Source of the DNA: Macrostomum lignano
Taxonomy: Eukaryota
NCBI GenBank assembly: GCA_002269645.1
Contig: NIVC01003018.1
Coordinates: forward strand, 1-62,388
Reading direction: 5' to 3'
Length of the DNA: 62,388 bases
This document shows, piece by piece, positions 10,611-46,735 of this stretch. The notes beneath the pieces were generated by a model that did no database searches, was not told the DNA's origin, and saw nothing but the letters and a program-made list of their open reading frames with translations. The position numbers were made by a program, and so were the translations under genes. Every line of letters begins with the position of its first letter. The stretch's first letter is position 1.

Positions 10611-11049
10611 CTATAAGTTACCACAATGTCTGTTGCCAATATGAATTGTTGCTGAAAAATCTGTTGCCAAAGTGTCTTGTCACCAAAGTTTCTAGAAACC
10701 TATGTTAGTTACCATATCTACTAGCTATTTAGTACTGGCAGACAAATAGTCCACTGGCCATTTCCCTAGGGCAGACAAATAGAAATGCAATTGGAATTAG
10801 GCCTATGTTAGTGGGTGGGGTGCTGCAGGGTGTCTAGTGATGATCAAGAAGAGTTGTTGCTCAAGATTGCTTAGGAAAGCAAGCAAAACAAGAAATCTCT
10901 CAGTATCCCAGTCCCTCCCACCTTAGTCCCTTTTTAAAGACAGGAGACAGACATAAAATTGATATACTGCAGCTATTACCATGTCTTATACTCACACAAG
11001 TTCAAATATTTATTTGTAGAAACTAAGGAAGTTGTTAGGCCCCTTTGGG

Positions 11050-11413
11050 GGCTGTAGCCTAGCAGTCTAGCGCAGGCTCTGGTATGCCAGCAACCCAGGC
11101 TCGATTCCAAGTGCAGTCACATTAATTTGGGGCTGAATTGGAATCTCGGCTTGGCTCTGCTCGTGCAATTAACAGCCTTGAGAGCCAACCCCCAAGGCAC
11201 AATGAAGTGTACATGCCTAATGATAATTATAAAAATAAAAGTTAGGGCCACTATATACCTGTGTGAGTGTGTGCCTGTGTACACCTATCTGTGCGCTTGT
11301 ATGCTTGCTCAGGGGTGTTGGTGGAATGGGCAGTAATGCCTCTCACTAGTTGTGTGCCTATGTCGCTTAAAGTGCGCCAGGATGCACACAACCCCCCTGT
11401 CTCTAATAAAAAA
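11050..11413 (+). mobile_element. tRNA-derived SINE, copy 1
   Basis: tRNA-like head 11050-11119 with acceptor stem GGCTGTA/TGCAGTC, A box TAGCCTAGCAG and B box GGCTCGATTCC. Body is homologous to the copies at 14.1 and 33.0 kb. A-rich end and degenerate TSD AGGCCCCTTTGGGG / AGGCCCATTGGGG. Confidence 0.85.
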
Positions 11414-12489
11414 GGCCCATTGGGGCCTATTTTCCAAAAAATGAACATGCAAAAGTAGAGAATTGCTGGCCTATATACTATATATCAATATCAATCAATA
11501 TGTCTATTTTCATGTCTATCTCTATCTATCTCTATCATTTTTCAATATCTCATCTATTATGCCTATATATAAATAGGCTTTTTATTGATTGTCTATAATA
11601 TCTATATACTATTAGGCCTATGCCTAACTGAATTTTTATTTCAAATTGAATTGCATCATAGTTCAATTAGTTGATTAGGCTATGCCTGAAAACATTGCAG
11701 AAGCATATCTGATAGCACTAGACTTGATTTAGATTTTATAATTAACCATATTTTTTACTTTAATTGAGACTAATATTGACTACCTAAGAAATTGCTTATG
11801 TCATAATTGTTTTGTGACTTTTATTATTTCTGTTTTAATATGAGTATAGAATCTAAATTGTAGCCAATGGCCAATATTATGGATAGCATCTAAGATAAAT
11901 TGATTCCAAACTATATAAGCAGGTTCCTAGGCCTAGTCATTTCATAATTTGCCATTTCATCATCTGGGGTATCTGGGGTGCTCACTTTGACTAGGGTTAC
12001 TTTGTCATCTTAATTAGTATACATATACACTACCTGAATAGTCATTTCATCATCTACCAATTATATTAGTTCTAACTTCCAAGTGAATTAATGTGGCAAT
12101 TAAACATATTTACTTGGAATCCTAATGATCCCATCACTTTGTCATTTTATTTTTCAAGCTACTTTGCTTCTGGTCACTTTGTTATCCAATATGACAAAAT
12201 GGAATATGATGATCTGACTAGTGACCATATAGGCATAGCCTGGTATGGTCTGACACATTAAAAAAAATTGTCTAATTTAGTTTGAACCTGAGCTAAAGTA
12301 GGCCTATTAAATTTATAAGTATTGCAATTTGTTCTATAAATTCAATAAAAGCTAGAACTAGCTTTGGATATAAATAAACAAAACTACTAATGCAATGACC
12401 TAGGTTTCAATCATGATAGTATAAATATTTTTTATTAAAAGTTTTTTAAAATGTTAAACATATTTAAGCTAAGATATAATTGCACTGGC

Positions 12490-12691: not shown

Positions 12692-13160
12692 GTCAAATGC
12701 TAAGGCTTATTGGGTAATTGCTGGATGTCAAGGCTTACTGAGGGAATTGCTGAGATGTCAAGGCTTACTGGGGGAATTGCTGATGTCAAGGCTTACTGAG
12801 GGAATTGCTAAGATGTCAAGGCTTACTGGGGGAATTGCTGATGTCAAGGCTTACTGAGGGAATCGCTAGGATGCCAAGTCTTACTGAGGGAATTGCTAAG
12901 ATGTCAAGGCTTATTGGGGGAATTGCTAAGATGTCAAGGCTTATTTGGAGAATTGCTGAGATGTCAAGGCTTATTGGGGGAATTGCTAAGATGTCAAGGC
13001 TTATTGGGAGAATTGCTGAGATGTCAAGGCTTATTGGGAGAATTGCTGAGATGTCAAGGCTTATTGGGAGAATTGCTGAGATGTCAATGCTTATTGGGAG
13101 AATTGCTGAGATGTCAATGCTTATTGGGAGAATTGCTGAGATGTCAATGCTTATAGGGGT
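12692..13160. repeat. 30-bp minisatellite GAGATGTCAAGGCTTATTGGGAGAATTGCT
   Basis: About 15 copies; related to the 29-bp array at 41.1-41.9 kb. Confidence 0.95.
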
Positions 13161-13460
13161 AATCACATAGGTGTCAAGGAAAATAGGATTCACAAATAAT
13201 TTTGTTGCTTGCTTATTGGACACCCCAGAGGGGGCACTAGTTTGCTAGATAAAGACTATACTCTTCATTTTTGCTTTTTTTACAAAGCAATTATAATTTG
13301 TTTTAGTTTAAAAGTCTATTTCATAAAATATATATTAATGGAAAGTTTAATTTAGTAAATCTGGCACATTTTGCGGATTTCATTTAAATAATAATACACC
13401 TATTTTTTATGCCTATTAGAAGTGTCAGCATTACTTTATTGAAACATAGCTATTTGCAAA

Positions 13461-14946
13461 ATGCCAATGAAATGCTGCATACCTTATTGCAAGAGTAATT
13501 ACAGTACAGTCACTGAGAGAACTACAATATTTGGTTTTCCTAAGCTGCAATCAGACTTTGAAGCATGGCTCAAGGTATTACCATCAACTATAAAGGTAAG
13601 TAAACAGTGGTCTGTTTCAGTAGAAAGTTTATTTTCCATGATATAGCTCCAGCTCCATGGTTATCCGAATAAGATTCAGTTATAATTAGATTACTACATA
13701 CCTACTAGATCAAGCCACTTATCAGCCATACCACCGGCCTTTGTTTTCATAAAGCAAATGGCCCATCTAGTCAAGTGTCGGGGGTATATCTGATTGAATT
13801 TCATGTGTCTAAACTGAATGAGTTCAGTATTATTAGGTACAGATGTTCGTTGCTCCACAACATTATTTGCATGCTTTGTACTGTAACATTTCAGAAAATC
13901 ACCAAATTCATGGGTGTCTGCGCCAAGCATTGGCCAGCGGACGCGGAAATGGTTAAAATCAAGCGCTTCCTGCGGCCAGTCCATCCTCCCAGTCTATTTC
14001 TGTCGGCTATTCTGCCGGCTATTCCAAAACGATACACCACAGTTGCCAGTAAGTTTGTGCAATCGCGGCTTTTTAGCTCGGAAATTAACGAAATATTTGA
14101 TTAAGAATTCGCAAGAGTCGAAATTTCATGCGAGAGGCATTACTGCCCATTCCACCGACTCCCCTGAGCAGGCACACAAGCGCGCGAATACGAACGCAGT
14201 CATACGCACAGGCACTCACACAAGACTGTACAGCGGCCCTAACTTTATTTATCGTTATGCATGTGCACTTCACTGTGCCTTGGGGTGACTCTCAATGGCG
14301 TTGATTACACGAGCAGAGCCAAGCCGAGATTCCAGTTTAGCCCCAAATTAATGTGACTGCACTTGGAATCGAGCCTGGGCCGCTGGCACATCAGAGCGCC
14401 GCAACAGACCCCCCCACTCAAACTTGACAAGCATGAAACACTAAACTTGTTAAAAAGTTCAACTATTTGGATTAAATTGAAGTTTAACAATTCCATTCGC
14501 TGTTGCTTTTAATTGTAATTTTCACATTTTTAGGGAAACAAACAAAGACCATCCGCCGTCGCAAGATCCGGAAGCAGTCCACCCCAGCTGCGCCAGTTCC
14601 AGATTTCATTCTGCAGGCAGATGAAGCCAGTTCAAACTGTGACATGGATTTAATAAGCTCGTGGCAAAATTTCAGACAGCAAATCCAGCAGCTGGACTGC
14701 ATCAAACGGGACAGTTGGTTATTGCAAACCGGTCCAAATACCGAACTGACCTTGTTAATTGTGATTCAGCAGTCTGTGGAATGCGCAGTCTGCATCTCTG
14801 GCGACTTCACGGCAAACGCCTACCGTCAGCACACTCCGGTGTACATTGCCGATTTAATTGGTTGCGATAATCGTATCGAAAGAATTAGCCAATTAGAAGC
14901 AGTGCTGAATCGACTTGTCAAACTGTGCGAACTGGATTCAATGTAA
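13461..14946 (+). CDS. THAP zinc-finger domain protein, 3 exons, ~233 aa; resembles the N-terminal part of P-element/THAP9-type transposases
   Basis: Exons 13461-13595, 13895-14048 and 14534-14946 with GT-AG and consistent phases (0, 1). THAP C2CH signature MPMKCCIPYC...FGFP...W...VCAKHW...P. Confidence 0.82.
14128..14415 (-). mobile_element. tRNA-derived SINE, copy 2 (3'-truncated), antisense in THAP gene intron 2
   Basis: Minus strand GCCAGCGGCCCAGGCTCGATTCCAAGTGCAGTCACATTAATTTGGGGCT...CTTGGCTCTGCTCG matches copy 1. Confidence 0.85.
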
Positions 14947-17865: not shown

Positions 17866-20800
17866 ATGTTAGAGACGAATGTCTGCAAGACTCGAATCCA
17901 ATTGATCCATTCGGCAATTCCAGGCCGAGTCACTGGCGGCTGTACGCGAGCAGGTGACGAGCAGCCTGCATCATATTTACACCCGCGATCAGCCCAGTCA
18001 GCAGCAGCTGACGCCTCAACAATCCGAGGAGCTGGACCGCCTAGCCGATGCCAAAGTGTTCTGCTGTCGAGCGCCCCTGGCCGAGCTTGTCGCTCTTGAC
18101 TGCGTCTGCGCCTGTCTGGCCGCCTGTCCGGAGCCGAAGCGACTGTTCGACCGGCTGTTTCATTCCGCCGGAGCCGGCTGGCCGGTGCAGCGGGAGAAGC
18201 GCCGGGCCACCCAGCTGAGCCGCCTGCTGTCTCTGTGCCTGTGCACCGGCACCGGCGGACCCGTGCTGGAATGCGCGGCCTCTTGGCTTCGCCGCCACGA
18301 AGGCCGTCCGGCTGTCCGACTGGTGGCCAGAGCTCTGGCCGAGGACGCGACCGCGATGCCGCCTGAGCAGCTGCGCCGGCTGGGACAGCTTGGCAGGTGA
18401 GTGCGAGAGTGGATGAGAATGGGTACTCTGTCTGTCTATTTCTGATTGGTTCCCTGCTTAAATGGCACTTTAAAGTTATTGGTTTCTAATCTTTCTAAGA
18501 ATCACTTCGTTAAAATGTAGTGAGAATCGCCCTATTAAGTTGCCATGAGAATCACCCTTTTAAATCGCCATGAGAATCGCCTTTTCAAATCGCCATGAGT
18601 ATCGCCCATTTAAATCGCCATGAGAATCGCCTTTTCAAATCGCCATGAGAATCGCCCATTAAATCGCCATGAGAATCGCCCATTAAATCGCCATGAGAAT
18701 AACCCATTGAATCTTCTCTAATATTCGAAAATATGAAGTCAATCCCAATGCCCTTTGTAGAACTTCGCCACAGGCTGCTGAAGCACTTTTATTGGCTTTC
18801 GGAGACACATACGGCTGGGAGACTGCAGGCAGTCAGCAGCAGCAAAAACAGCAGCAGCAGCAGGAACAGCACACTCTGGAGCCGCCGCCCCTAGCTGTGT
18901 TGCAGCTGGCCTGCGATTGGCTGCAATCTTGCGGCGGCAGCAGCGGTGGAAAGCAGCAATCCATGCAGCAGCAGCAGCAGCAGCAGCAGCAACTGGCTAC
19001 TCTGCTGCGCGGCGCCGGGGCACAGCGGCATGCCGAGCATTCGGCTCTATACTGCATGCTCAGGTGGGCCTTGCTATGCATTCACAGTACCTGTGCGCAT
19101 CTTATCCTGTCTCTTCTGAGATAATCCCCCTCCAATCCACCCAGAGAATCGCCCCTCCAATCCACCCAGAGAATCGCCCCTCCAATCCACCCAGAGAATC
19201 GCCCCTTAATCCACCTAGAGAATCGCCCCTCTAATCCAGTCAGAGAATCGCCCCTTAATCCACCTAGAGAATCGCCCCTCCAATCCACCCAGAGAATCGC
19301 CCCTTAATCCACCTAGAGAATCGCCCCTCTAATCCAGTCAGAGAATCGCCCCTTAATCCACCTAGAGAATCGCCCCTCTAATCCACCTAGAGAATCACCC
19401 CTCTAATCCACCCAGAGAATCGCCCCTTAATCCACCTAGAGAATCGCCCCTCTAATCCAGTCAGAGAATCGCCCCTTAATCCACCTAGAGAATCGCCCCT
19501 CTAATCCAGTCAGAGAATCGCCCCTTAATCCACCCAGAGAATCGCCCCTCTAATCCACCCAGAGAATCGCCCCTCTAATCCACCTAGAGAATCGCCCCTC
19601 TAATCCAGTCAGAGAATCGCTCTCTAATCCACCCAGAGAATCGCCCCTTAATCCACCCAGAGAATCGCCCCTCTAATCCACCTAGAGAATCGCCCCTCTA
19701 ATCCAGTAAGAGAATCGACCCCTAAATCCACCCAGAGAATCGCCCCTCTAATCCACCCAGAGAATCGCCCCTCTAATCCACCTAGAGAATCGCCCCTCTA
19801 ATCCACCTAGAGAATCGCCCCTCTAATCCACCTAGAGAATCGCTCTCTAATCCACCCAGAGAATCGCCCCTCTAATCCACCTAGAGAATCACCCCTCTAA
19901 TCCACTAAGAGAATCGCCCCTCTAATCCACTAAGAGAATCGCCCCTCTAATCCACCTAGAGAATCGCCTTCTAATCCACCTAGAGAATCACCCCTCTAAT
20001 CCACTAAGAGAATCGCCCCTCTAATCCAGTCAGAGAATCGCTCTCTAATCCACCCAGAGAATCGCCCCTTAATCCACCTAGAGAATCGCCTTCTAATCCA
20101 CCTAGAGAATCACCCCTCTAATCCACTAAGAGAATCGCCCCTCTAATCCACTTAGAGAATCGCCCCTCTAATCCAGTCAGAGAATCGCCCCTCTAATCCA
20201 CCTAGAGAATCGCCCCTCCAATCCACCTAGAGAATCGCCCCTCTAATCCACCTAGAGAATCGCCCCTCTAATCCACCTAGAGAATCGCCTCTCTAATCCA
20301 CCTAGAGAATCGCCCCTCTAATCCACCTAGAGAATCGCCCCTCCAATCCACCTAGAGAATCGCCCCACTAATCCACCTAGAGAATCGCCCCTCCAATCCA
20401 CCTAGAGAATCGCCCCTCTAATCCACCTAGAGAATCGCCCTTCCAATCCACCCAGAGAATCGCCTTTGCAATCTCATGGAGATAGTTAATCAAGTGACTA
20501 TAGTTGAAACTCGCAATAATAAAAATAAAAGTGCAAACTTAAAGTTCATATGTACTTTTATTTCACTCAATCTACAGATGGCTCGCCGCGTCGCCTCTGC
20601 CGTCCATGCCGCCGCTTGGCTCAGCCGATGCCGCCATCGCCCGATTACTTGACGACCTCTTTGCCGCTCTAGTCGACTCCTGTGTCCGCTGTCCGGCCGA
20701 CTCAGCTGTGTCCGGCGGCGGCGGCGGCAATTCTTCGTCCACTAATAGCAATCCTAATCACTTGTCCGCCGCGCCATTGCGAGGCTCCGAAGCGGCCGAA

Positions 20801-21019: not shown

Positions 21020-21490
21020 AAGTGTCCACAAATTCATTGTGGTGTCCGGGAATCTTGTAGTGTCCAGGAGTCTACTAAAATGTCCGGTAGTCTATTTAAC
21101 TGTCCGGGAGGCTATTGTAGTGTCTGGGAGTCTATTGTATTGTCCGAGAGGCTATTGTAGTGTCCGGGATCCTATTGTTGTGTCTGGGAGGCTATTTTTG
21201 TGTCCGGTAGTCTGTTTAACTGTCCGGTAGTCTATTTAACTGTCCGGGAGTCTATTGTAGTGTCCGGGAGTCTATTGTAGTGTCCGGGAGTCTATTGTAG
21301 TGTCCGGGAGTCTATTGTAGTGTCCGGGAGTCTATTGTAGTGTTCGGGAGTCTATTGTAGTGTTCGGGAGTCTATTGTAGTGTCCGGGAGTCTATTGTAT
21401 TGTCCGAGAGGCTATTGTAGTGTCTGGGAGGCTATTTTAGTGTCTGGGAGGCTATTGTAGTGTCCGGGAGGCTATTGTAGTGTCCGGGAT
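21005..21490. repeat. 20-bp minisatellite GGGAGTCTATTGTAGTGTCC beginning at the INTS15 stop codon
   Basis: GTGTCC recurs every 20 nt from within the last codons; degenerate on the 5' side and homogeneous at 21245-21400. Confidence 0.92.
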
Positions 21491-22004
21491 GTGTGCTCAT
21501 TAATGATTCTCAAGCATCCAGCTGCTCTGTACAATAACGAATGCTGGCGTTAATAAATTTAATTTGATGTAAGATAATTTATTTAGTTAAGTCAACTTCA
21601 CGACTGGACAGTTAGACCTTGTAATTAACCTTAATAGTCCCGAATTGTTACCTGTTGTCACCAGGTAATTAAACAATTGCCAATTTTGATCAGTTTGATT
21701 GACCGTCAATCCAGTTCTGTTTAAGGCTGTGTTTGTTAGCCGTCTTCTGTTTCTGTTATTTAATTGTGTCTTTGTAACTGTCTACGCGCTTCTTTATTTA
21801 ATACAGCATTCGCTTTGCCGCCATAATCAATATGTAAATCATTCACAACTGAATGTAGTTTTATTTTATTCAAATAAATAGGTTCTGCTGAGTGCATTTT
21901 CTATAGGGCGATTCTCGCTTTTGTTGGAATAAATGTTTAAACAATAAATTGTTTAACAGCTTATGCGTGTGTCATCTTTCTGCCTGCTCTACTTTGTCTA
22001 AGGT

Positions 22005-22895
22005 TGAAGGGGCGATTCTCTCGGTGGATTGGAGGGGCGATTCTCTGGGTAGATTGGAGGGGCGATTCTCTTTGGTGGATTGGAGGGGCGATTCTCTCTT
22101 GGTGGATTGGAGGGGTGATTCTCTTTGGTAGATTAGAGGGGCGATTCTCTTTGGTGGATTGGAGGGGCGATTCTCTCTTGGTGGATTGGAGGGGTGATTC
22201 TCTTTGGTAGATTAGAGGGGCGATTCTCTTTGGTGGATTAGAGGGGCGATTCTCTTTGGTGGATTGGAGGGGCGATTCTCTCTTGGTGGATTGGAGGGGT
22301 GATTCTCTTTGGTAGATTAGAGGGGCGATTCTCTTTGGTGGATTGGAGGGGTGATTCTCTTTGGTAGATTAGAGGAGCGATTCTCTTTGGTGGATTGGAG
22401 GGGTGATTCTCTTTGGTAGATTAGAGGGGCGATTCTCTTTGGTGGATTGGAGGGGCGATTCTCTTTGGTGGATTGGAGGGGCGATTCTCTTTGGTGGATT
22501 AGAGGGGCGATTCTCTTTGGTGGATTGGAGGGGCGATTCTCTCGGTGGATTGGAGGGGCGATTCTCTTTGGTGGATTGGAGGGGCGATTCTCTTTGGTGG
22601 ATTGGAGGGGCGATTCTCTTTGGTGGATTAGAGGGGCGATTCTCTCGGTGGATTGGAGGGGCGATTCTCTGGGTGGATTGGAGAGGCGATTCTCTGGGTG
22701 AATTAGAGGGGCGATTCTCTGGGTGGATTAGAGGGGCGATTCTCTAGGTAGATTAGAGGGGCGATTCTCTCGGTGGATTGGAGGGGCGATTCTCTAGGTA
22801 GATTAGAGGGGCGATTCTCTCGGTGGATTAGAGGGGCGATTCTCTGGGTGAATTAGAGGGGCGATTCTCTGGGTGGATTGGAGAGGCGATTCTCT
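22005..22895 (-). repeat. 25-27-bp minisatellite, reverse complement of the 19.1-20.5 kb array
   Basis: Unit GGTGGATTGGAGGGGCGATTCTCTTT, about 35 copies. Confidence 0.97.
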
Positions 22896-23499
22896 GAGTG
22901 GATTAGGTTTATCTGCGGTGGATTATACTGTCAGGCTGGTGTCCAGTGCAAACGCTGTGCCATATGGCAGAAGCTTTCTTGTGTAACTCCTGTGTGCTTG
23001 CATAGAAATATCGGAACTCGCAGACAGATTTATGCATCTGTCGCCAATACAGCAATGGGGGGATCGAGCGATCACTGACAAGCGGCTACATGTGTCCGGG
23101 AACTGTGCGCATCAGTCAGAGGAAATGCGCTCATACTTTTGTCAGTAGTATTGCGAAGTTGTTTATTGGAGGAAGTCTGGGCGCTTGTGCAATGTCAGGG
23201 TATCCAAGTGGCCCTGTCCAATGGGCACTCTTGCCGTGATGAATGCGTTTAGCGCAGTCCAATCATCTCATTTTGGCTGCTAGTTGGCGTATAAAACTTG
23301 GGAAGCGCTTTGAGGCTCAACTCTAGTGCTTAGTTCTCCATTTTCTGGTTTCTTGTGCTTGCACTCGATTTTCGGAAGGAACTCTGTTTTTTTTGTTCTG
23401 GTGAGTTGATTGATTTTATTATATTCATTTTTTACGCATGCGGATTTGTCTAGGTTTACGACTCCATACACCGAGTTTGGCGCCCCTTATTCTGACTCT

Positions 23500-23523
23500 T
23501 TCTATCTATCTATCTATCTATCC

Positions 23524-23610
<87 letters not shown>

Positions 23611-23611
23611 C

Positions 23612-23661
<50 letters not shown>

Positions 23662-23664
23662 TTT

Positions 23665-23714
<50 letters not shown>

Positions 23715-23715
23715 C

Positions 23716-23806
<91 letters not shown>

Positions 23807-23827
23807 CATCTATCTATCTATCTATCC

Positions 23828-23874
<47 letters not shown>

Positions 23875-23875
23875 C

Positions 23876-23966
<91 letters not shown>

Positions 23967-23967
23967 C

Positions 23968-24005
<38 letters not shown>

Positions 24006-24008
24006 TTT

Positions 24009-24042
<34 letters not shown>

Positions 24043-24043
24043 C

Positions 24044-24085
<42 letters not shown>

Positions 24086-24127
24086 TTTTCTATCTATCTA
24101 TCTATCTATCTATCCATCTATCTATCC

Positions 24128-24161
<34 letters not shown>

Positions 24162-24193
24162 TTTTCTATCTATCTATCTATCTATCTATCTAA

Positions 24194-24250
<57 letters not shown>

Positions 24251-24251
24251 C

Positions 24252-24305
<54 letters not shown>

Positions 24306-24308
24306 TTT

Positions 24309-24358
<50 letters not shown>

Positions 24359-24359
24359 C

Positions 24360-24434
<75 letters not shown>

Positions 24435-24507
24435 CATCTATCTATCTATCTATCTATCTATCTATTTTTCTATCTATCTATCTATCTATCTATCCATCTA
24501 TCTATCC

Positions 24508-24545
<38 letters not shown>

Positions 24546-24605
24546 TTTTCTATCTATCTATCTATCTATCTATCTAACTATCTATCTATCTATCTATCTA
24601 TCTAA

Positions 24606-24670
<65 letters not shown>

Positions 24671-24671
24671 C

Positions 24672-24762
<91 letters not shown>

Positions 24763-24763
24763 C

Positions 24764-24818
<55 letters not shown>

Positions 24819-24819
24819 C

Positions 24820-24862
<43 letters not shown>

Positions 24863-24878
24863 CATCTATCTATCTATC

Positions 24879-24933
<55 letters not shown>

Positions 24934-24985
24934 CTATCTATCAATCTATCAATCTATCTATCTATCTATCTATCTATCTATTTAT
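23500..24985. repeat. (TCTA)n / GATA microsatellite, about 1.5 kb
   Basis: Directly visible, with TCCA and TTTT interruptions. Confidence 0.99.
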
Positions 24986-26467: not shown

Positions 26468-26766
26468 GGGGGGAGCAGCTCAGCGGTGAACGCGACCCCT
26501 GGTTCGATTCCTGTTTTGTGCACAAGAATTAGCCGGTGGGTTGTCAGGCGATTCACAGCCATGAGGGCCAGGCCCCGAGGCACAGAGAGTGTACATGCCT
26601 GACGGTTAGACAGTCAGGGCGGATGTACACCCTGAGTGAGCGTGCGTGTGAGTGCGTGCCTGCGTACAGAATTGGCGCTCTTGCGTGTGCTGAGGGGTCA
26701 ACGGAATGGGCTGAATTGCCGTCAGCGCTGGGTGCGAGATCAGGCGCGTCGCCACCGGGGGGGGGG
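26468..26766 (+). mobile_element. Related tRNA-derived SINE with a different, shortened head and a shared core
   Basis: A box AGCTCAGCGG and B box GGTTCGATTCC separated by only ~14 nt. Core CCCCGAGGCACAGAGAGTGTACATGCCTGAC...GTCAGGGC...TGTACAC and GCTGAGGGG...GGAATGGGC align to SINE copies 1-3. Confidence 0.7.
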
Positions 26767-26814
26767 ACAGTAAAAGCTTGTGACTCGTTGTGGTAATCAA
26801 TCATTTTTCTTCAG

Positions 26815-27590
26815 GGCGCCGAAATGAGTGCCTGCGGCGCCAAAATGAGTGCCTGCGGCGCCAAAATGAGTGCCTGCGGCACCAAAATGAGTGCCTGCGG
26901 CGCCAAAATGAGTGCCTGCGGCGCTAAAATGAGTGCCTGCGGCGCCAAAATGAGTGCTTGCGGCGCTTAAATGAGTGCCTGCGGCGCCAAAATGAGTGCT
27001 TGCGGCGCTTAAATGAGTGCCTGCGGCGCCAAAATGAGTGCTTGCGGCGCTTAAATGAGTGCCTGCGGCGCCAAAATGAGTGCCTGCGGCGCCAAAATGA
27101 GTGCCTGCGGCACCAAAATGAGTGCCTGCGGCGCCAAAATGAGTGCCTGCGGCGCTAAAATGAGTGCCTGCGGCGCCAAAATGAGTGCCTGCGGCGCCAA
27201 AATGAGTGCCTGCGGCGCCAAAATGAGTGCCTGCGGCACCAAAATGAGTGCCTGCGGCGCCAAAATGAGTGCCTGCGGCGCTAAAATGAGTGCCTGCGGC
27301 GCCAAAATGAGTGCCTGCGGCGCTAAAATGAGTGCCTGCGGCGCTAAAATGAGTGCCTGCGGCGCTAAAATGAGTGCCTGCGGCGCCAAAATGAGTGCCT
27401 GCGGCGCCAAAATGATTGCCTGCGGCGCCAAAATAAGTGCCTGCGGCGCTAAAATGAGTGCCTGCGGCGCCAAAATGAGTGCCTGCGGCGCCAAAATGAG
27501 TGCCTGCGGCGCCAAAATGAGTGCCTGCGGCGCCAAAATGATTGCCTGCGGCGCCAAAATGAGTGCCTGCGGCGCTAAAATGAGTGCTGA
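26815..27590. repeat. 21-bp minisatellite GAGTGCCTGCGGCGCCAAAAT
   Basis: About 37 copies. Confidence 0.98.
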
Positions 27591-32989: not shown

Positions 32990-33320
32990 TTTACTAGTGC
33001 GCACTTTAAGCGACATTGTCACACAACCGGCGAGAGGCATTGCTGCCCATTCCGCCGACTCCCCTGAGCGGGCACACAAGCGCGCGGATACGTACGCAGT
33101 CATACACACAGGCACTCACACAGGAGTGTACAGTGGCCCTAACTTTATTTATCGTTAGGCATGTACACTTCACTGTGCCTTGGGGGTTGGCCATCAAGGC
33201 CGCCAATTGCACGAGCAGAGCCAAGCCGAGATTCCAATTAACCCCAAGTTAATGTGACTGCAGTTGGAATCGAGCCTGGGCCGCTGGCACATCGGGCTAC
33301 GGCCCCACTACAACCAGCCT
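32990..33320 (-). mobile_element. tRNA-derived SINE, copy 3
   Basis: Minus strand TGGTTGTAGTGG (A box), GGCTCGATTCC (B box), full core, and 3' part GTCGCTTAAAGTGCGC shared with copy 1. Confidence 0.85.
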
Positions 33321-35786: not shown

Positions 35787-38344
35787 ATGAAGCTCAACCA
35801 GGAGCGGCTGGCTTTAGTTTCTCTATCGCTGCTGCTGGCCACCAGCAGTGCAGCGCAGGCAACCGCGCCAATCAGCATCAACGACGACACACCCGCCGGA
35901 TCGACCATAGTCGACCTTCGCTCCGTCCTGACCAACAATCAAATTGCGGATTCGGCAGACTTGAAAATCCTTAACCATCAAGATCCCATTGTCAACTGTC
36001 TGGCAATTAACGGCACTGTTCTGTACGCCACTCGCTTAGTGGACCGGGACAGCCTCTGTCGAGAGCCGCTGATCCAGCGATACGTCAAGCCGTGCTGTCT
36101 GGACTCGGAGCCGTGCGAGCTGTGGCTACAGCTGTCGCACAAGGCTGCTCAATCGAACGTGCTAATCCCAAGCTCAGGCTGAGACTGCTGGATTCGAACG
36201 ATAATGCCCCGACTTTCCGGCGGGCCAGCCTGCAGGTGGAAGTGCAGGAGGGCGAGCGGGGCAGGCGAATTTCCAGTCCGGACTTTCTGGCCGCCGACCC
36301 GGATCAGGGAGACAACAGCAGGCTGACCTACCGTCTGGAGTCAGACGATGACGAGTTTTCGTTCGCGCTGGAGAACAGCAACAGGAGGCCGGTGGTGCTG
36401 AAGACCAACAGAGCTCTGGACAGGGAGAAAACGGACAGGTGAGAGAGCGATATAGAAATAGAGTAGTCAAGCTAGGGTCACTCAATGAAGGGCCGGCCCT
36501 CAAAAGTGCGGTATCAAACAGTAGCTTAGCTCGAAAGACCCTGCTGCGAAGCAGCTCAACCTGAGACTCTGAGGACCAGTTGGGAAGTGAGCTGCAGCTC
36601 AACCTGAGACTCTGAGGACCAGTTGGGAAGTGAGCTGCAGCTCAACCTGAGACTCTGAGGACCAGTTGGGAAGTGAGCTGCAGCTCAACCTGAGACTCTG
36701 AGGACCAGTTGGGAAGTGAGCTGCAGCTCAACCTGAGACTCTGAGGACCAGTTGGGAAGTGAGCTGCAGCTCAACCTGAGACTCTGAGGACCAGTTGGGA
36801 AGTGAGCTGCAGCTCAACCTGAGACTCTGAGGACCAGTTGGGAAGTGAGCTGCAGCTCAACCTGAGACTCTGAGGACCAGTTGGGAAGTGAGCCGCAGCT
36901 CAACCTGAGACTCTGAGGACCAGTTGGGAAGTGAGCCGCAGCTCAACCTGAGACTCTGAGGACCAGTTGGGAAGTGAGCCGCAGCTCAACCTGAGACTCT
37001 GAGGACCAGTTGGGAAGTGAGCCGCAGCTCAACCTGAGACTCTGAGGACCAGTTGGGAAGTGAGCCGCAGCTCAACCTGAGACTCTGAGGACCAGTTGGG
37101 AAGTGAGCCGCAGCTCAACCTGATACTCTGAGGACCAGTTGGGAAGTGAGCTGCAGCTCAACCTGAGACTCTGAGGACCAGTTGGGAAGTGAGCTGCAGC
37201 TCAACCTGAGACTCTGAGGACCAGTTGGGAAGTGAGCCGCAGCTCAACCTGAGACTCTGAGGACCAGTTGGGAAGTGAGCCGCAGCTCAACCTGAGACTC
37301 TGAGGACCAGTTGGGAAGTGAGCCGCAGCTCAACCTGAGACTCTGAGGACCAGTTGGGAAGTGAGCCGCAGCTCAACCTGAGACTCTGAGGACCAGTTGG
37401 GAAGTGAGCCGCAGCTCAACCTGATACTCTGAGGACCAGTTGGGAAGTGAGCTGCAGCTCAACCTGAGACTCTGAGGACCAGTTGGGAAGTGAGCCGCAG
37501 CTCAACCTGAGACTCTGAGGACCAGTTGGGAAGTGAGCTGCAGCTCAACCTGAGACTCTGAGGACCAGTTGGGAAGTGAGCCGCAGCTCAACCTGAGACT
37601 CTGAGGACCAGTTGGGAAGTGAGCCGCAGCTCAACCTGAGACTCTGAGGACCAGTTGGGAAGTGAGCTGCAGCTCAACCTGAGACTCTGAGGACCAGTTG
37701 GGAAGTGAGCCGCAGCTCAACCTGATACTCTGAGGACCAGTTGGGAAGTGAGCCGCAGCTCAACCTGAGACTCTGAGGACCAGTTGGGAAGTGAGCTGCA
37801 GCTCAACCTGAGACTCTGAGGACCAGTTGGGAAGTGAGCCGCAGCTCAACCTGAGACGTCGGTTTGGAAAAAATGTCGCATCCCAACTGACCCACCGTCC
37901 AGTTACTCGCTCCGCCTCCTGGCAGTGGACAACGGCCGGCCGCAGCGCACGGGCACCCTGTCCATCACGGTACTCGTGTTGGACATCAACGACGAGACGC
38001 CGGTCTTTGAGAAGTCGCTTTATGTGGCCAGTGTGCCGGAAAATGCGCCCAAAAACACCCCGGTGGTGACTGTACGCGCCGTTGATGGGGACCAGGGAGC
38101 CAATGGCCGCGTGTCCTACCGGATCAGCCCGGGAGAGTATGCCAACCATTTTGATGTTTCCAATCAGCCGGACGGGTCCGGTTTGGTGAAGCTGAAGTAC
38201 CAGCTGGATGCCGACCAGCTGGTGCACCGGGGCGGCAAGATCGATCTGTATGTTGGCGCCATGGACCACGGTAGCCCGCAACGGAGCGCCGAGGAGGCCC
38301 GAATCGAGGTCACCGTCAGTAACGTCAACGACGAGAGGCCAGAG

Positions 38345-38606: not shown

Positions 38607-41600
38607 CAGTTAGTTAGTCAGTTAGTTAGTCAGTTAGTTAGTTAGCTAGTCAGTTAGTTAGTTAGTTAGTTAGCTTTGTGCTCCGCTCCGAGCGACCGCT
38701 CAACCGGGAGCTGCGGTCGACCGTCCAGCTGATCATCGTCTGCCTGGATGGCGGCGGCCTCAACGGTACGGCCGTGGTTCGATTCCGCGTCTCCGACCGG
38801 AACGACAATCCGCCGCGCTTCCAGAAGCCGGTGTTCCAGTTCCACCTGCCCGAGAACACGCCGCCGCCAGAGAACTATCGGATCGGCATAATCAAAGCTA
38901 ACGACAAGGACGAGGGCGAGAACGCGCGCATCGCCTACTCGCTGGAGCCGTCGGCTGATGCGGACGCCTTTCATCTGGACGCTCAGACTGGCCAGCTGTT
39001 CGCCCGGCGGCCATGGGACCGCGAGGAGCTGCTGCGCAGGTCGGCGTCGGGATCGGCCGGCCAACGAAGGCTGGCTCAGGTGAGCCGCGGCAAACGGAGA
39101 AACTAGGGGAAAGAGGGTTCGGTTTTTCAGGTTCGGCTTCGGCTTAGGGGTCCGTGGTTGGCGCTTAGGACTCGGCTTAGCGTTCTCCTTGATTTTATCC
39201 CGGTCGGCAATTCTCATTTTTCTAGTGAGGCAACTTCAAAGTCGCGAACTTAAAACACCGATTTCAAGGTGACCCTGACCGTGACGGCCACGGACTCGAA
39301 CCCGGACCACCGGGACTCAGCCACCGTGCTCGTCACAATCGACAATTTGAACGACAATCGACCGCAGTTTGAGCAGACGGACTACAGCTTCCGGGTGATG
39401 GAGAATGCGCTGATTGGTCGCGAGGTTGGCGCCGTGCGAGCATTCGACGCCGACGACGAGGGCAGTTTGTCGCCCGGACCCATCGATTACGTAATCATCT
39501 CGGCCGGCGACGAGCCGCTGGAGCCGCAGCGGAGCTTCCAGCTCAACCGCAGGACGGGCCAGCTCAGCCTAGCTCGCAAACTCGACCGCGAGACGCGGCC
39601 AAGCTACGTCTTCCGCGTGGCTGCCATCGACAGCGGCGTCTCGGGCGACTCCGGCCGAGGCCGGCTGACCGGCACGGCGACCATCACCGTTGAAGTGGAG
39701 GACGAAAACGACTGCGACCCGCAGATAATAGAGGTGGGCGCCGCTAGGCGCAGCTTGACGCTGTGAACACTTGGGGATAGAGGTGCACAGATTAATGTAT
39801 ACAGTGACTAAACATGTACACTGATGACGGATGTACACTGATTAAGGATGTACACTGATGACGGATGCACACTGATGACGGATGTATACTGATGACGAAT
39901 GTATACTGATGACGGATGTACACTGATAAAGGATGTACACTGATAAAGGATGTACACTGATGACGGATGCACACTGATGACGGATGTACACTGATAAAGG
40001 ATGTACACTGATAAAGGATGTACGCTGATAAAAGATGTAACACTGATGAGGGATGTAAACAGATGAAGAATTTACACTAATGAATTTGCTCTTAACGAAT
40101 CATGTGCGATACTAAGGGCACACAAGCTGACTGCATCCGAAAGCATCAGCCATCTGCACAGTCATTCTCCCACTGCCCCACAGCCGCGAGCAGACCAAGT
40201 CTTCAAAGTGCCGTCATCGACGAAGCCCGGCCGGACTCTGCTGCAGATCCAGGCGGTGGACAACGACGTCGGGCAGAACGCCCAGATTGTCTACAGCTTG
40301 ACTTCCCTGGCCGCCAATGCCATCGGCGTTGACCGCGGCAGCGGCACGGTGATCGTCACGGGGCCGCTCGGACCGCCCGGCGCCAGCTTCGAGGCCACCC
40401 TGGAGGCCAGGGACTGCGGCAGCCCGGCCCGGTTCAGCCGAGTCCGAGTTTTCTTTCGCGTATCGGCGCCAGACGGAGACGACGACAACGTCGACGCCGC
40501 AGCTGCTGGGGAGAATGGCGCCGATCGGGGGAGAATCGGCGGCGGCGGCGGCCTCATCTCCGGCCGGAGCGCATCGACGCGAGCAGTTCTACTGCTGGGC
40601 CTGCTGTTCCTCCTGCTGCTGCTGCTGGCCGCGGCGGCCGCGGTGGCGCTGGTGCTGCTCAGGCCCTGCCGTCGGCGACCAGCAGGTGGCGGCGTCGACG
40701 GAGCCAACGACGTAGCTGGCCGTCAGCGTCGGCGGCACCGGAGGATGCTGGGATCCGAGGCCACCGCGGCAGCGGCGATCACGGAAGCTGCCTCTTCCGG
40801 GAAATGCGGCGGCTTCGAGACGGTGAAGTTCGCGCCGGAGCGAGGTGAGCACACCAGAGCTCAAGGGGGGGGGGAGTTGCCGAGATGCCAAGGCTCAAGG
40901 AAGAGATCCTGAGATGCCAAGGCTCAAGGAAGAGATTCTGAGATGCCAAGGCTCAAGGAAGAGATCCTGAGATGCCAAGGCTCAAGGAAGAGATCCTGAG
41001 ATGCCAAGGCTCAAGGAAGAGATCCTGAGATGCCAAGGCTCAAGGAAGAGATCCTGAGATGCCAAGGCTCAAGGAAGAGATCCTGAGATGCCAAGGCTCA
41101 AGGAAGAGATCCTGAGATGCCATGGCTCAATGGGTTGCTGAGAAGCCATGGCTCAATGGCGAATTGCTGAGAAGCCATGGCTCAATGGGGAGTTGCTGAG
41201 ATGCCATGGCTCAATGGGGAGTTGCTGAGAAGCCATGGCTCCAGTGGGAGTTGCTGAGATGCCATGGCTCAATGGGGAGTTGCTGAGATGCCATGGCTCA
41301 ATGGGGAGTTGCTGAGATGCCATGGCTCAATGGGGAGTTGCTGAGATGCCATGGCTCAATGGGGAGTTGCTGAGATGCCATGGCTCAATGGGGAGTTGCT
41401 GAGATGCCATGGCTCAATGGGGAGGTGCTGAGATGCCATGGCTCCAGTGGGAGTTGCTGAAAAGCCATGGCTCCAGTGGGAGTTGCTGAGATGCCATGGC
41501 TCAATGGGGAGTTGCTGAGATGCCATGGCTCAATGGGGAGTTGCTGAGATGCCATGGCTCAATGGGGAGGTGCTGAGATGCCATGGCTCAATGGGGAGTT

Positions 41601-45189: not shown

Positions 45190-46735
45190 AGTAGACAGAC
45201 TCCAGAGTGACAGAGACGCAGATGAACTCCAAAGTGACAGATAGACAGCCAGACAAACTTCATAGCGACAGTAGAAAGGTGACAGACACGTGGACAGGCT
45301 CCAGAATGAAAGTAGAAAGGTGACAGACACGTGGACAGGCTCCAGAATGAAAGTAGAAGGGTGACAGACACGCGGATAGGCTCCGGAGGGACAGTAGAAA
45401 GGTGACAGATACGCGGATAGGCTCCGGAGTGACAGTAGAAAGGTGACAGACACGCGGATAGGCTCCAGAGTGATATAAGAAAGGTGACAGATACGCGGAT
45501 AGGCTCCGGAGTGACAGTAGAAAGGTGACAGACACGCGGATAGGCTCCAGAGTGATATAAGAAAGGTGACAGACACGCGGATAGGCTCCGGAGTGACAGT
45601 AGAAAGGTGACAGACACGTGGACAGGCTCCAGAGTGACAGTAGAAAGGTGACAGACACGCGGATAGGCTCCGGAGTGACAGTAGAAAGGTGACAGATACG
45701 CGGATAGGCTCCGGAGTGACAGTAGAAAGGTGACAGATACGCGGATAGGCTCCGGAGTGACAGTAGAAAGGTGACAGACACGCGGATAGGCTCCAGAGTG
45801 ATATAAGAAAGGTGACAGACAGCCAGACAAACTTCATAGCGACAGTAGAAAGGTGACAGACACGTGGACAGGCTCCAGAATGAAAGTAGAAAGGTGACAG
45901 ACACGTGGACAGGCTCCAGAATGAAAGTAGAAGGGTGACAGACACGCGGATAGGCTCCGGAGGGACAGTAGAAAGGTGACAGATACGCGGATAGGCTCCG
46001 GAGTGACAGTAGAAAGGTGACAGACACGCGGATAGGCTCCAGAGTGATATAAGAAAGGTGACAGACACGCGGATAGGCTCCAGAGTGATATAAGAAAGGT
46101 GACAGACACGCGGATAGGCTCCAGAGTGATATAAGAAAGGTGACAGACACGCGGATAGGCTCCGGAGTGACAGTAGAAAGGTGACAGACACGTGGACAGG
46201 CTCCAGAGTGACAGTAGAAAGGTGACAGACACGCGGATAGGCTCCGGAGTGACAGTAGAAAGGTGACAGATACGCGGATAGGCTCCGGAGTGACAGTAGA
46301 AAGGTGACAGATACGCGGATAGGCTCCGGAGTGACAGTAGAAAGGTGACAGACACGCGGATAGGCTCCAGAGTGATATAAGAAAGGTGACAGACACGCGG
46401 ATAGGCTCCGGAGTGACAGTAGAAAGGTGACAGACACGTGGACAGGCTCCAGAGTGACAGTAGAAAGGTGACAGACACGCGGATAGGCTCCGGAGTGACA
46501 GTAGAAAGGTGACAGACACGCGGATAGGCTCCAGAGTGATATAAGAAAGGTGACAGACACGCGGATAGGCTCCGGAGTGACAGTAGAAAGGTGACAGACA
46601 CGTGGACAGGCTCCAGAGTGACAGTAGAAAGGTGACAGACACGTGGACAGGCTCCAGAGTGACAGTACAAAGGTGACAGACACGTGGACAGGCTCCAGAG
46701 TGACAGTACAAAGGTGACAGACACGTGGACAGGCG
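45190..46735. repeat. 41-bp minisatellite with higher-order block structure
   Basis: GACAGACACGCGGATAGGCTCCGGAGTGACAGTAGAAAGGT, about 36 copies. The variant unit ...CCAGACAAACTTCATAGC... recurs at about 45245 and 45820. Confidence 0.97.

What the first reader, a model, noticed from the sequence alone, without database searches (positions are those of the whole stretch)
26468..26766. Two SINE families with different tRNA heads share a core with a covarying nested stem-loop: candidate new conserved SINE domain or structured RNA
Seen: copies at 11050-11413 (+), 14128-14415 (-) and 32990-33320 (-) form one family. This element has a different, shortened A/B-box head but the same core. In all four, AGGCAC...GTGCCT encloses GTG(T/C)ACA...T(G/A)TA(C/T)A(C/G), which encloses CCT(A/G)AC...GT(T/C)AGG (perfect in copy 3 and here, 1-2 substitutions in copies 1 and 2). 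The inner pair changes from AAC/GTT (33126-33168) to GAC/GTC (26589-26630), a compensatory change, while the loop diverges completely. A second block GCT(C/G)AGGGG...GGAATGGGC-N6-GCC keeps a GGC/GCC stem with a variable loop. Known: CORE, V, Deu/Nin, Ceph and Meta are shared SINE central domains; from memory I see no match to them. Inference: a functional RNA fold retained across head swaps.
Basis: partly seen in the sequence, partly recalled or inferred. Interest (0 to 1): 0.75.

Follow-up and report, generated by a model that had tools for sequence, protein, structure and literature searches.

The report
Flatworm SINE families sharing one body
Four copies of two short retroposon (SINE) families of the flatworm Macrostomum lignano share a 180-base middle section holding a three-tier hairpin. 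This is ordinary SINE architecture, and four copies are too few to show that the hairpin is a functional or new RNA fold.

Summary
The sequence facts hold. Three copies of one SINE-like family (11050-11413 +, 14128-14415 -, 32990-33320 -) and one copy of a second (26468-26775 +) share a core of about 180 nt (alignment z = 24 against shuffles). Outside the core only the Pol III B box is similar. The nested hairpin AGGCAC/GTGCCT > GTGTACA/TGTACAC > CCTRAC/GTYAGG is perfect (19 bp) in copy 3 and in the element at 26468. It carries one A-U to G-C double change and decays at the background rate in copies 1 and 2.

One double change is not significant covariation (131 of 500 shuffles reach it; RNAalifold covariation term +1.75). 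The fold is no better on the sense strand than on the antisense strand. Rfam has no match, including tRNA and hammerhead. No further copy could be obtained from any collection.

The arms are better conserved between the two lineages than the loops (36/38 against 22/30; Fisher p = 0.018). That suggests constraint in the master copies. A published zebrafish DANA (V-SINE) copy shows no significant similarity. The other described domains could not be tested.

A second hairpin that pairs the B-box strand with a downstream complement is present in all four copies and is strand-specific. The host is Macrostomum lignano or a close relative. Verdict: a new member of a known kind, of modest interest.

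The parts
26468..26775 (+). c4: the single copy of the second SINE-like family. It has a short head, the shared core, a tail hairpin, a G10 run and the end ACAGTAAAA.
   Evidence: Sequence; nhmmer and CM hits; alignment. No clear target-site duplication.
26476..26511 (+). c4 Pol III promoter motifs. A-box-like CAGCTCAGCGG at 26476-26486 (7 of 9 specified consensus positions). Perfect B box GGTTCGATTCC at 26501-26511. Only 14 nt lie between the boxes.
   Evidence: 6 B-box matches in the window against 0.59 expected, 4 of them in the four copies. Sequence.
26493..26543 (+). c4 B-box hairpin: the B-box/T-arm strand pairs with a downstream complement.
   Evidence: -21.6 kcal/mol, z = -3.0 to -3.2 on the sense strand against -1.5 on the antisense strand.
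26546..26728 (+). c4 shared core (pre-hairpin block, nested hairpin, GT-rich stretch, block 2). This is the only part with significant similarity to family 1.
   Evidence: 74% over 170 nt; 62-77% per segment; z = 24.
26578..26661 (+). c4 nested hairpin. Outer arms 26578-26583/26656-26661, middle arms 26589-26595/26624-26630, inner arms 26598-26603/26613-26618. 19 of 19 Watson-Crick pairs.
   Evidence: Folding.
26689..26720 (+). c4 block 2: GCTGAGGGG ... GGAATGGGC TGAATT GCC.
   Evidence: Conserved in sequence; the stem is only 3 bp.
26731..26756 (+). c4 tail hairpin GGTGCGA ... TCGcCACC, followed by the G10 run and ACAGTAAAA.
   Evidence: Read directly from the sequence; also in the MFE fold.
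11050..11413 (+). c1: the longest family-1 copy. It has the full head, a 9-bp tail hairpin GTTGTGTGC ... GCACACAAC, an A-rich end, and a flanking repeat AGGCCC(C/A)TT(T)GGGG.
   Evidence: B box at 11098-11108. A-box match at 11055-11065.
11195..11276 (+). c1 nested hairpin, decayed: 1 broken pair, 2 G.U pairs, and a 19-nt A/T-rich apical loop.
   Evidence: z about -0.5.
11095..11154 (+). c1 B-box hairpin.
   Evidence: -27.8 kcal/mol, z = -3.5 to -3.7 on the sense strand, -1.6 on the antisense strand.
14128..14415 (-). c2: family-1 copy that lacks the tail and has an internal or 5' head deletion.
   Evidence: B box at 14365-14375.
14210..14280 (-). c2 nested hairpin, decayed: 3 broken pairs.
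   Evidence: z about 0.
32990..33320 (-). c3: the family-1 copy closest to the family majority (10 differences in 254). It has a head deletion of about 20 nt and a shortened tail.
   Evidence: B box at 33266-33276.
33110..33180 (-). c3 nested hairpin, 19 of 19 Watson-Crick pairs.
   Evidence: z = -2.3 to -2.8 on the sense strand, -3.6 on the antisense strand.
33215..33284 (-). c3 B-box hairpin.
   Evidence: -25.3 kcal/mol, z = -2.7 to -2.8.

Best explanation
These are dispersed, dead copies of two related Pol III-type (tRNA-like, A/B-box) SINE families of Macrostomum lignano or a very close relative.

Both families have the same plan: a short head with a B box; a hairpin in which the B-box strand pairs with a downstream complement; a body of about 180 nt; a tail hairpin; and a short TA(A/G)TAAAA end. 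Only the body and the B box are alike in sequence. The body is therefore a module that the two lineages share, either by descent or by recombination between SINEs. That is the normal modular way in which SINEs evolve.

The body contains a 19-bp, three-tier palindrome. Its arms stayed intact in the source (master) copies of both lineages while its loops drifted. The most likely reading (inferred, not shown) is that it acts in cis in the SINE transcript. It could aid folding or stability, or help handling by the partner LINE's proteins, so that only source copies that keep it go on amplifying. Once inserted, copies lose it at the neutral rate.

It is not an independent structured-RNA gene or a ribozyme. 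It has not been shown to be a cross-species conserved domain.
For: - Host: the Gypsy pol ORF in the window is 83-95% identical, over the aligned fifth to quarter of its length, to UniRef proteins of M. lignano.
- Copies and families.
- B box: 4 of the 6 window matches lie in the four copies, against 0.59 expected.
- c1 has a flanking direct repeat and an A-rich end, as expected for LINE-mediated insertion.
- Similarity is confined to the core: z = 24, against -0.4 to 0.5 for the head 5' parts, linkers and tails; per-segment identities.
- Arms against loops: 36/38 against 22/30 identical, with 19 gapped loop columns; Fisher p = 0.018. Under uniform neutral divergence of 20-26% all 19 Watson-Crick pairs survive with probability 3e-4 to 2e-5.
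- The family-1 majority sequence equals the perfect c3 arms, and the deviations in c1 and c2 are private.
- Inserted copies are not protected: 6/114 stem positions changed against 48/753 overall.
- The B-box hairpin is present in all four copies at z = -2.7 to -3.7, stronger on the sense strand. All 12 aligned pairs are kept between the families through four one-sided changes and one two-sided change.
- No Rfam family matches.
- Precedent: a hairpin within a conserved SINE central domain, the Vhc subdomain (PMC4758252).
Against: - There are only two independent lineages, and one of them is known from a single copy. Constraint on the arms is therefore inferred from one comparison.
- Block-wise sequence conservation for some other reason, such as a protein-binding site or recent recombination, would give the same picture.
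- The one compensatory pair is not significant.
- The palindrome is not strand-specific.
- The thermodynamic signal is weak in c4 (z = -1.5) and absent in c1 and c2.
- No parent tRNA is recognisable.
- No partner LINE was seen in the window.
- Only c1 shows a target-site duplication.
Confidence: 0.6

Rival explanations
1. The hairpin has no function. The two families split recently enough, or exchanged the body by recombination recently enough, that the palindrome is inherited as it was. The pattern of conserved arms and diverged loops comes from alignment uncertainty, indel-prone A/T-rich and GT-rich loops, and the reader having selected for it.
For: - Covariation is not significant.
- The loops that 'diverge' are an A/T-rich apical loop and a GT-rich low-complexity stretch, where indels are common (19 gapped columns).
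- With gaps ignored, the arm/loop contrast is only p = 0.018.
- TGTACA is self-complementary, which inflates the apparent stem.
- Inserted copies decay freely.
- Single-sequence z-scores are modest.
Against: - The rest of the core is 62-77% identical, while the arms are 95% identical and the only two arm differences fall in one pair and compensate.
- Uniform neutral divergence keeps all 19 pairs with probability of 3e-3 or less even at 20% divergence with G.U pairs allowed.
Confidence: 0.25
2. The shared body is a piece of the partner LINE (5' or 3' UTR) or of a bipartite non-autonomous LINE. The hairpin is a LINE RNA element recognised by the LINE's own proteins, picked up separately by two tRNA-like heads.
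For: - Kojima 2018 (PMC5786205) shows that LINE 5' parts contribute SINE middle bodies.
- Heads and tails are dissimilar between the families while the body is shared.
- Both families have tail hairpins and the same short 3' end TA(A/G)TAAAA.
Against: - No LINE and no other copy of the body or hairpin exists in the 62-kb window.
- The six-frame peptide searches found nothing.
- This rival could not be tested against M. lignano LINEs.
Confidence: 0.1
3. The core is a diverged member of an already described SINE central domain (V/Vhc, CORE, Deu, Meta/Nin, MESC, Snail, Ceph). The hairpin would then correspond, for example, to the Vhc stem-loop.
For: - The motifs CACAGT..ACATGC, GAGTG..GTGTGTATG and GGAA(T)GGGCA occur in the same order in zebrafish DANA and in the core (alignment).
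- Vhc is a hairpin with an internal loop that is preserved in invertebrate SINEs (PMC4758252).
Against: - Smith-Waterman scores of the c1, c3 and c4 cores against a published DANA copy do not exceed dinucleotide shuffles under any of four scoring schemes (z of 0.9 or less on the sense strand). The same method gives z = 24 for c3 against c4.
Confidence: 0.07
4. The hairpin is an exapted or autonomous functional RNA: a miRNA precursor, a self-cleaving ribozyme as in the Schistosoma Sm-alpha SINEs, or another structured non-coding RNA.
For: The hairpin is about 75-90 nt long with 19 pairs. Flatworm SINE-like elements that carry hammerhead ribozymes are known (from memory: Ferbeyre et al. 1998).
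Against: - Rfam has no hit at gathering score in the whole window, and no hammerhead or credible miRNA hit at E up to 10 in c1, c3 or c4.
- The large asymmetric internal loops (6/10 nt, and up to 25 nt in c4) are unlike Drosha or Dicer substrates.
- Two of the four genomic copies have lost pairs.
Confidence: 0.03

Closest known systems
Vhc subdomain of the V-SINE central domain (Matetovici et al. 2016, PMC4758252)
   Same: A short hairpin with an internal loop sits inside a conserved SINE central domain. It is preserved in SINE families that otherwise differ in head, body and tail. Its function is unknown, and the authors also call for more sequences.
   Different: The core has no significant sequence similarity to a published V-SINE (DANA) copy. 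Vhc is documented across phyla, whereas this core is known from one window of one genome. This hairpin is longer: three tiers and 19 bp.
SINE superfamilies defined by a highly conserved central domain: CORE, V, Deu, Ceph, Meta/Nin-DC, MESC, Snail (PMC4824008, PMC4758252, PMC11481361)
   Same: The central block is shared by families whose heads and tails are not alike. What such domains do is still unknown.
   Different: Those domains are defined by conservation across species, classes or phyla. Here, sharing is shown only between two families within one genome.
LINE-derived middle bodies of SINEs (Kojima 2018, PMC5786205)
   Same: It offers an origin for a body module that is combined with different heads and tails.
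   Different: No LINE counterpart was found or could be searched for.
Stem-loops in SINE and LINE 3' tails recognised by LINE reverse transcriptase, with compensatory mutations (Nishihara et al. 2016, PMC4824008, fig. 5 as described in the text)
   Same: A conserved hairpin in a SINE with a compensatory change, explained by constraint on retrotransposition.
   Different: Those hairpins sit at the 3' end. This one lies about 110-150 nt upstream of the 3' end. The elements here have separate tail hairpins.
Schistosoma Sm-alpha SINE-like elements with a hammerhead ribozyme (from memory)
   Same: A flatworm Pol III-type short retroposon that carries a structured RNA motif.
   Different: No hammerhead or other ribozyme model matches.

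Membership tests
tRNA-type (Pol III A/B-box) SINE | Internal B box GGTTCGANNCC in the 5' head | tested here: met
   GGYTCGANNCC gives 6 matches in the window against 0.59 expected. Four of them lie in the four copies at the same relative position.
tRNA-type (Pol III A/B-box) SINE | A box at tRNA-like spacing upstream of the B box | tested here: inconclusive
   c1 matches TRGCNNAGYRG at 11055-11065, 43 nt before the B box. c4 has 7 of 9 specified positions and only 14 nt between the boxes. c2 and c3 have head deletions that remove part of it.
tRNA-type (Pol III A/B-box) SINE | Head recognisably derived from a tRNA | tested here: not met
   ARAGORN finds no tRNA in the window. The Rfam tRNA model gives no hit at E up to 10 in c1, c3 or c4. 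In the predicted folds the B-box strand is paired in a long hairpin rather than a cloverleaf.
tRNA-type (Pol III A/B-box) SINE | Short, non-coding, dispersed copies in both orientations with copy-specific decay | tested here: met
   Four copies of 290-365 nt, two on each strand. They differ from the family majority by 4-10.5%. The six-frame peptides have no protein relatives.
tRNA-type (Pol III A/B-box) SINE | Target-site duplications and a 3' end suited to LINE-mediated retroposition | tested here: inconclusive
   c1 is flanked by AGGCCC(C/A)TT(T)GGGG on both sides and has an A-rich end. No duplication was found for c2, c3 or c4. c1, c3 and c4 share the end TA(A/G)TAAAA. The partner LINE is unknown.
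SINE superfamily with a highly conserved central domain | Central domain shared by families with unrelated heads and tails | tested here: met
   Core against core z = 24. Head 5' parts z = -0.4, linkers z = -0.35, tails z = -0.4 to 0.5.
SINE superfamily with a highly conserved central domain | Conservation of the domain across species, classes or phyla | not testable with these tools
   No flatworm or other animal genome is searchable here. Pattern scans of viral, metagenome and prokaryote collections gave only chance hits. M. lignano DNA is not on record.
V-SINE (V / Vhc domain) | Sequence similarity of the core to the V domain | tested here: not met
   A published DANA copy (bioRxiv 10.1101/493155) was compared with the c1, c3 and c4 cores. 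Sense-strand z was 0.9 or less under four scoring schemes.
CORE, Deu, Ceph, Meta/Nin-DC, MESC, Snail, Inv, Pln domains | Sequence similarity of the core to the domain consensus | not testable with these tools
   SINEBase, Dfam and Repbase are not available, and the papers hold the sequences only in figures or in supplements that are not held. That is a lead, not a test.
Structured RNA family (Rfam-type) | Match to a curated covariance model | tested here: not met
   There are 0 matches at gathering score in the window. In E-value mode only sub-threshold hits appear; the best is sno_ZL1 at 17.4 bits against a gathering score of 64.
Structured RNA family (Rfam-type) | Statistically supported covariation | tested here: not met
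   One pair with a two-sided change, which 131 of 500 shuffles reach. The RNAalifold covariation term is +1.75 kcal/mol. There are only two independent lineages.
Self-cleaving SINE-like elements / retrozymes (hammerhead) | Hammerhead or other ribozyme core | tested here: not met
   No ribozyme model hits at E up to 10 in c1, c3 or c4.

The most novel reading that the evidence does not exclude
The body of about 180 nt, with its three-tier hairpin, is a previously undescribed highly conserved SINE domain. It would define a superfamily present in Macrostomum and other flatworms or spiralians. The hairpin, and the strand-specific B-box hairpin, would be RNA structures required for SINE amplification and would show real covariation once hundreds of subfamily consensus sequences are compared.
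Probability: 0.12. Interest if true: 0.55.

Novelty: new member of a known kind. Interest (0 to 1): 0.3.

Why it matters
What conserved SINE central domains do has been an open question since CORE-SINEs were described. A pair of families in a tractable, transgenic flatworm model that share a body with a clean palindrome would be a convenient test case. The hairpin could be mutated in a marked SINE and Pol III expression or retroposition followed.

As it stands, the finding adds two apparently undescribed SINE families to the M. lignano repeat catalogue. No Macrostomum SINE description was found in the searchable literature. It also flags two candidate RNA hairpins. It does not establish a new domain or a new structured RNA.

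Tried and rejected
1. More copies. These all failed:
- Translated SINE frames were searched against 5.8 billion proteins as an alignment and as a six-frame concatenate. Neither gave a hit.
- Exact look-up of the window's Gypsy pol and of its best UniRef relative found nothing on record.
- Core patterns were scanned in viral contigs, metagenome contigs and prokaryote genomes. Only chance matches came back. For the viral hits only the searched pattern aligns. The metagenome hit has no similarity beyond the pattern and looks like GC-rich bacterial sequence. The two prokaryote MAG hits were not inspected further.
- nhmmer and a covariance model with filters off found only the four known copies in the window.

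2. Rfam, at gathering score and in permissive mode. Nothing credible, no tRNA and no hammerhead.

3. The V-domain lead. Colinear motifs shared with zebrafish DANA were recalled from memory. A real DANA copy was then retrieved from a preprint. The similarity does not exceed shuffles, so the lead was rejected at this sensitivity.

4. MIR/CORE from memory. No match on the sense strand. One marginal antisense score for c4 (z = 2.9, 6/400) was ignored as one of many tests.

5. Searching paper texts and supplements for core motifs or SINE consensus sequences. Only primer coincidences turned up.

6. CpG decay as the source of the A-U to G-C change. Rejected, because the changed positions are not CpG products. 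CpG decay does explain the apparent C-G / U.G / U-A series at the base of block 2 in c3, c2 and c1 (GGCGG/CTCGC against GGTGG/CTCAC), so that series is not evidence for structure.

7. A coding origin for the core. Rejected, because the frames are not conserved between the families.

Full report
**What is there**

- blastn gives 81-90% identity among c1 (11050-11413, +), c2 (14128-14415, -) and c3 (32990-33320, -).
- The element of the finding, c4 (26468-26775, +), matches c3 at 74% over 170 nt.
- A profile HMM and a covariance model run without filters find no fifth copy or fragment in the 62,388-base window.

The window is animal DNA. It carries an intact Ty3/Gypsy element, cadherin exons and a very large number of minisatellites. 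The Gypsy pol ORF is 83-95% identical, over the aligned fifth to quarter of its length, to UniRef proteins of Macrostomum lignano. The host is therefore that flatworm or a very close relative.

**Are they SINEs?**

Evidence for:
- The B-box consensus GGYTCGANNCC occurs six times in the window against 0.59 expected. Four of those matches are in the four copies, at the same relative position.
- c1 also matches an A-box pattern 43 nt upstream of its B box.
- c1 ends in an A-rich run and is flanked on both sides by AGGCCC(C/A)TT(T)GGGG.
- The copies are short, lie on both strands, have no conserved reading frame, and differ from the family majority by 4-10%.

Evidence that is missing or negative:
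- ARAGORN finds no tRNA, and the Rfam tRNA model gives nothing even at E = 10. 'tRNA head' therefore rests on the promoter boxes alone.
- No target-site duplication was found for c2, c3 or c4.
- No LINE is present in the window.

c2 and c3 carry internal head deletions relative to c1. The short head of c4 could therefore be a property of that one copy.

**How far the two families are alike**

I used Smith-Waterman scores against dinucleotide shuffles.

| Region compared (c4 against family 1) | z |
|---|---|
| Core | 24 |
| 5' parts of the heads | -0.4 |
| Linkers after the B box | -0.35 |
| Tails | -0.4 to 0.5 |

Identity per segment is 71% in the block before the hairpin, 77% in the hairpin, 62% in the GT-rich stretch and 69% in block 2. 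It is 41-57% elsewhere, which is near the level of forced alignments.

**The nested hairpin**

The arms were located exactly.
- All 19 pairs are Watson-Crick in c3 and c4.
- c1 has one broken pair and two G.U pairs. c2 has three broken pairs.
- The family-1 majority sequence equals the perfect c3 arms, and the deviations in c1 and c2 are private.
- Across c1, c2 and c3, stem positions changed at 6/114 against 48/753 for the region as a whole. Inserted copies are therefore not under constraint.

Between the two lineages the arms differ at only 2 of 38 positions. Those two positions form one pair and compensate (A-U to G-C). Unpaired positions score 22 same, 8 different and 19 gapped. Fisher p is 0.018 with gaps ignored. 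Under uniform neutral divergence of 20-26%, all 19 Watson-Crick pairs would survive with probability 3e-4 to 2e-5. This is suggestive of constraint on the arms in the source copies.

The formal tests for covariation fail.
- One pair in one sequence shows a two-sided change, and 131 of 500 shuffles reach that value.
- RNAalifold gives a covariation term of +1.75 kcal/mol.

Further cautions:
- TGTACA in the middle arm is its own reverse complement.
- The 3' outer arm lies in GT-rich, low-complexity sequence and is not in register between copies.
- Single-sequence z-scores are -2.3 to -2.8 for c3, -1.5 for c4 and about 0 for c1 and c2.
- The palindrome folds as well or better on the antisense strand: -3.6 for c3 and -3.5 for c4. 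Nothing marks it as a sense-strand RNA structure rather than a plain inverted repeat.
- The 'stem' of block 2 is 3 bp. The apparent C-G / U.G / U-A series at the base of block 2 in c3, c2 and c1 sits on CpG dinucleotides and is explained by CpG decay in individual copies.

**A second, better-behaved hairpin**

In all four copies the B-box strand pairs with a complement 15-35 nt downstream.
- Energies are -21.6 to -27.8 kcal/mol.
- The z-score is -2.7 to -3.7 on the sense strand and only -1.5 to -2.1 on the antisense strand, because of G.U pairs.
- Anchored on the B box, all 12 aligned pairs are kept between family 1 and c4. Four changes are one-sided and wobble-compatible, and one is two-sided.
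- The linker that supplies the 3' arm has no detectable sequence similarity between the families.

It also means the heads are not wholly independent of each other.

**Comparison with known elements**

- Rfam has no match at gathering score and nothing credible in permissive mode, including hammerhead ribozymes.
- The literature searchable here describes no Macrostomum SINE.
- The closest precedent is the Vhc subdomain of V-SINEs. It is a 37-39-bp block that forms a hairpin with an internal loop and is preserved in otherwise unrelated invertebrate SINEs (PMC4758252).
- I noticed colinear motifs between the core and zebrafish DANA and retrieved a real DANA copy from a preprint. Its similarity to the cores does not exceed shuffles (z of 0.9 or less).
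- Deu, Ceph, Meta/Nin, MESC, Snail and the other domains could not be tested.

**Attempts to get more copies**

All attempts failed.
- Translated SINE frames have no relatives among 5.8 billion proteins.
- M. lignano DNA is not on record for exact look-ups.
- Pattern scans of viral, metagenome and prokaryote collections returned only chance matches.

**Conclusion**

These are copies of two related Pol III-type SINE families of M. lignano that share a body module of about 180 nt. That is ordinary modular SINE architecture. The body holds a 19-bp three-tier palindrome whose arms were kept in both source lineages.

My best reading (inferred) is a cis-acting role in the SINE transcript during amplification. 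The main rivals are neutral inheritance and a LINE-derived origin.

The claim of a covarying, functional fold and the claim of a new conserved SINE domain are both unproven with four copies from one window. The finding's own refutation criteria, a large alignment and a library search, remain to be run.

Noticed in passing
11095-11154 (+), 14314-14383 (-), 33215-33284 (-), 26493-26543 (+): In all four SINE copies the B-box/T-arm strand pairs with a downstream complement to form a long hairpin. The z-score is -2.7 to -3.7 on the sense strand and -1.5 to -2.1 on the antisense strand. All 12 aligned pairs are kept between the two families through wobble-compatible changes, although the linker sequences are not alignable.
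   Followed up: partly
26815-27587 (+): A minisatellite of 36.8 copies of a 21-bp unit (GGCGCCAAAATGAGTGCCTGC) starts about 40 nt after c4. Its unit contains TGAGTGCCTG. In the window this 10-mer otherwise occurs only at the 3' outer arm of the hairpin in c2 and c3 (32 matches against 0.13 expected). The array may derive from a SINE fragment.
   Followed up: partly
11409-11450 (-) and 11034-11050 (+): The repeat flanking c1 is itself a small hairpin (AGGCCC-ATT-GGGGCCT). On the minus strand the downstream copy is preceded by CAUUUUUUGG and followed by a T run, and it gives a weak partial match to the 3' end of SmY snRNA (15.8 bits, E = 0.49). This is probably chance. No spliced-leader-like donor site was seen.
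   Followed up: partly
1982-7521 (-): An apparently intact Ty3/Gypsy retrotransposon. It has a gag ORF (6505-7521) and a 1651-aa pol ORF (1982-6937) with RT, RNase H and integrase domains. The pol ORF is 83-95% identical, over the aligned fifth to quarter of its length, to M. lignano UniRef proteins.
   Followed up: partly
38690-40912 (+): Cadherin-repeat coding exons (Pfam Cadherin, E = 1e-18 and 7e-9), interrupted by a 17-bp minisatellite at 39814-40084 and followed by a 29-bp minisatellite at 40871-41940. Two B-box-like matches here (38776 and 39292) are coding sequence, not SINEs.
   Followed up: partly
19119-20464 and 22004-22895: Two long arrays with 25-26-bp units that are reverse complements of each other (they share GAGGGGCGATTCTCT). 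They form a large inverted pair around a third array at 21036-21489.
   Followed up: no
whole window, e.g. 23497-24985, 57540-59177, 36551-37857, 45267-46734: Tandem-repeat density is very high: 68 TRF rows. It includes (TCTA)n and (CTAT)n arrays of 1.5-1.6 kb and many minisatellites of 15-45 bp. Several units share motifs, for example TTGCTGAGATG in 12702-13163 and 40871-41940.
   Followed up: no
14128 (3' end of c2) and the heads of c2 and c3: c2 ends abruptly after block 2 with no tail. c3 lacks about 20 nt and c2 about 14 nt inside the head relative to c1. c3 also lacks about 25 nt of the c1 tail. Copies of family 1 are structurally heterogeneous.
   Followed up: partly
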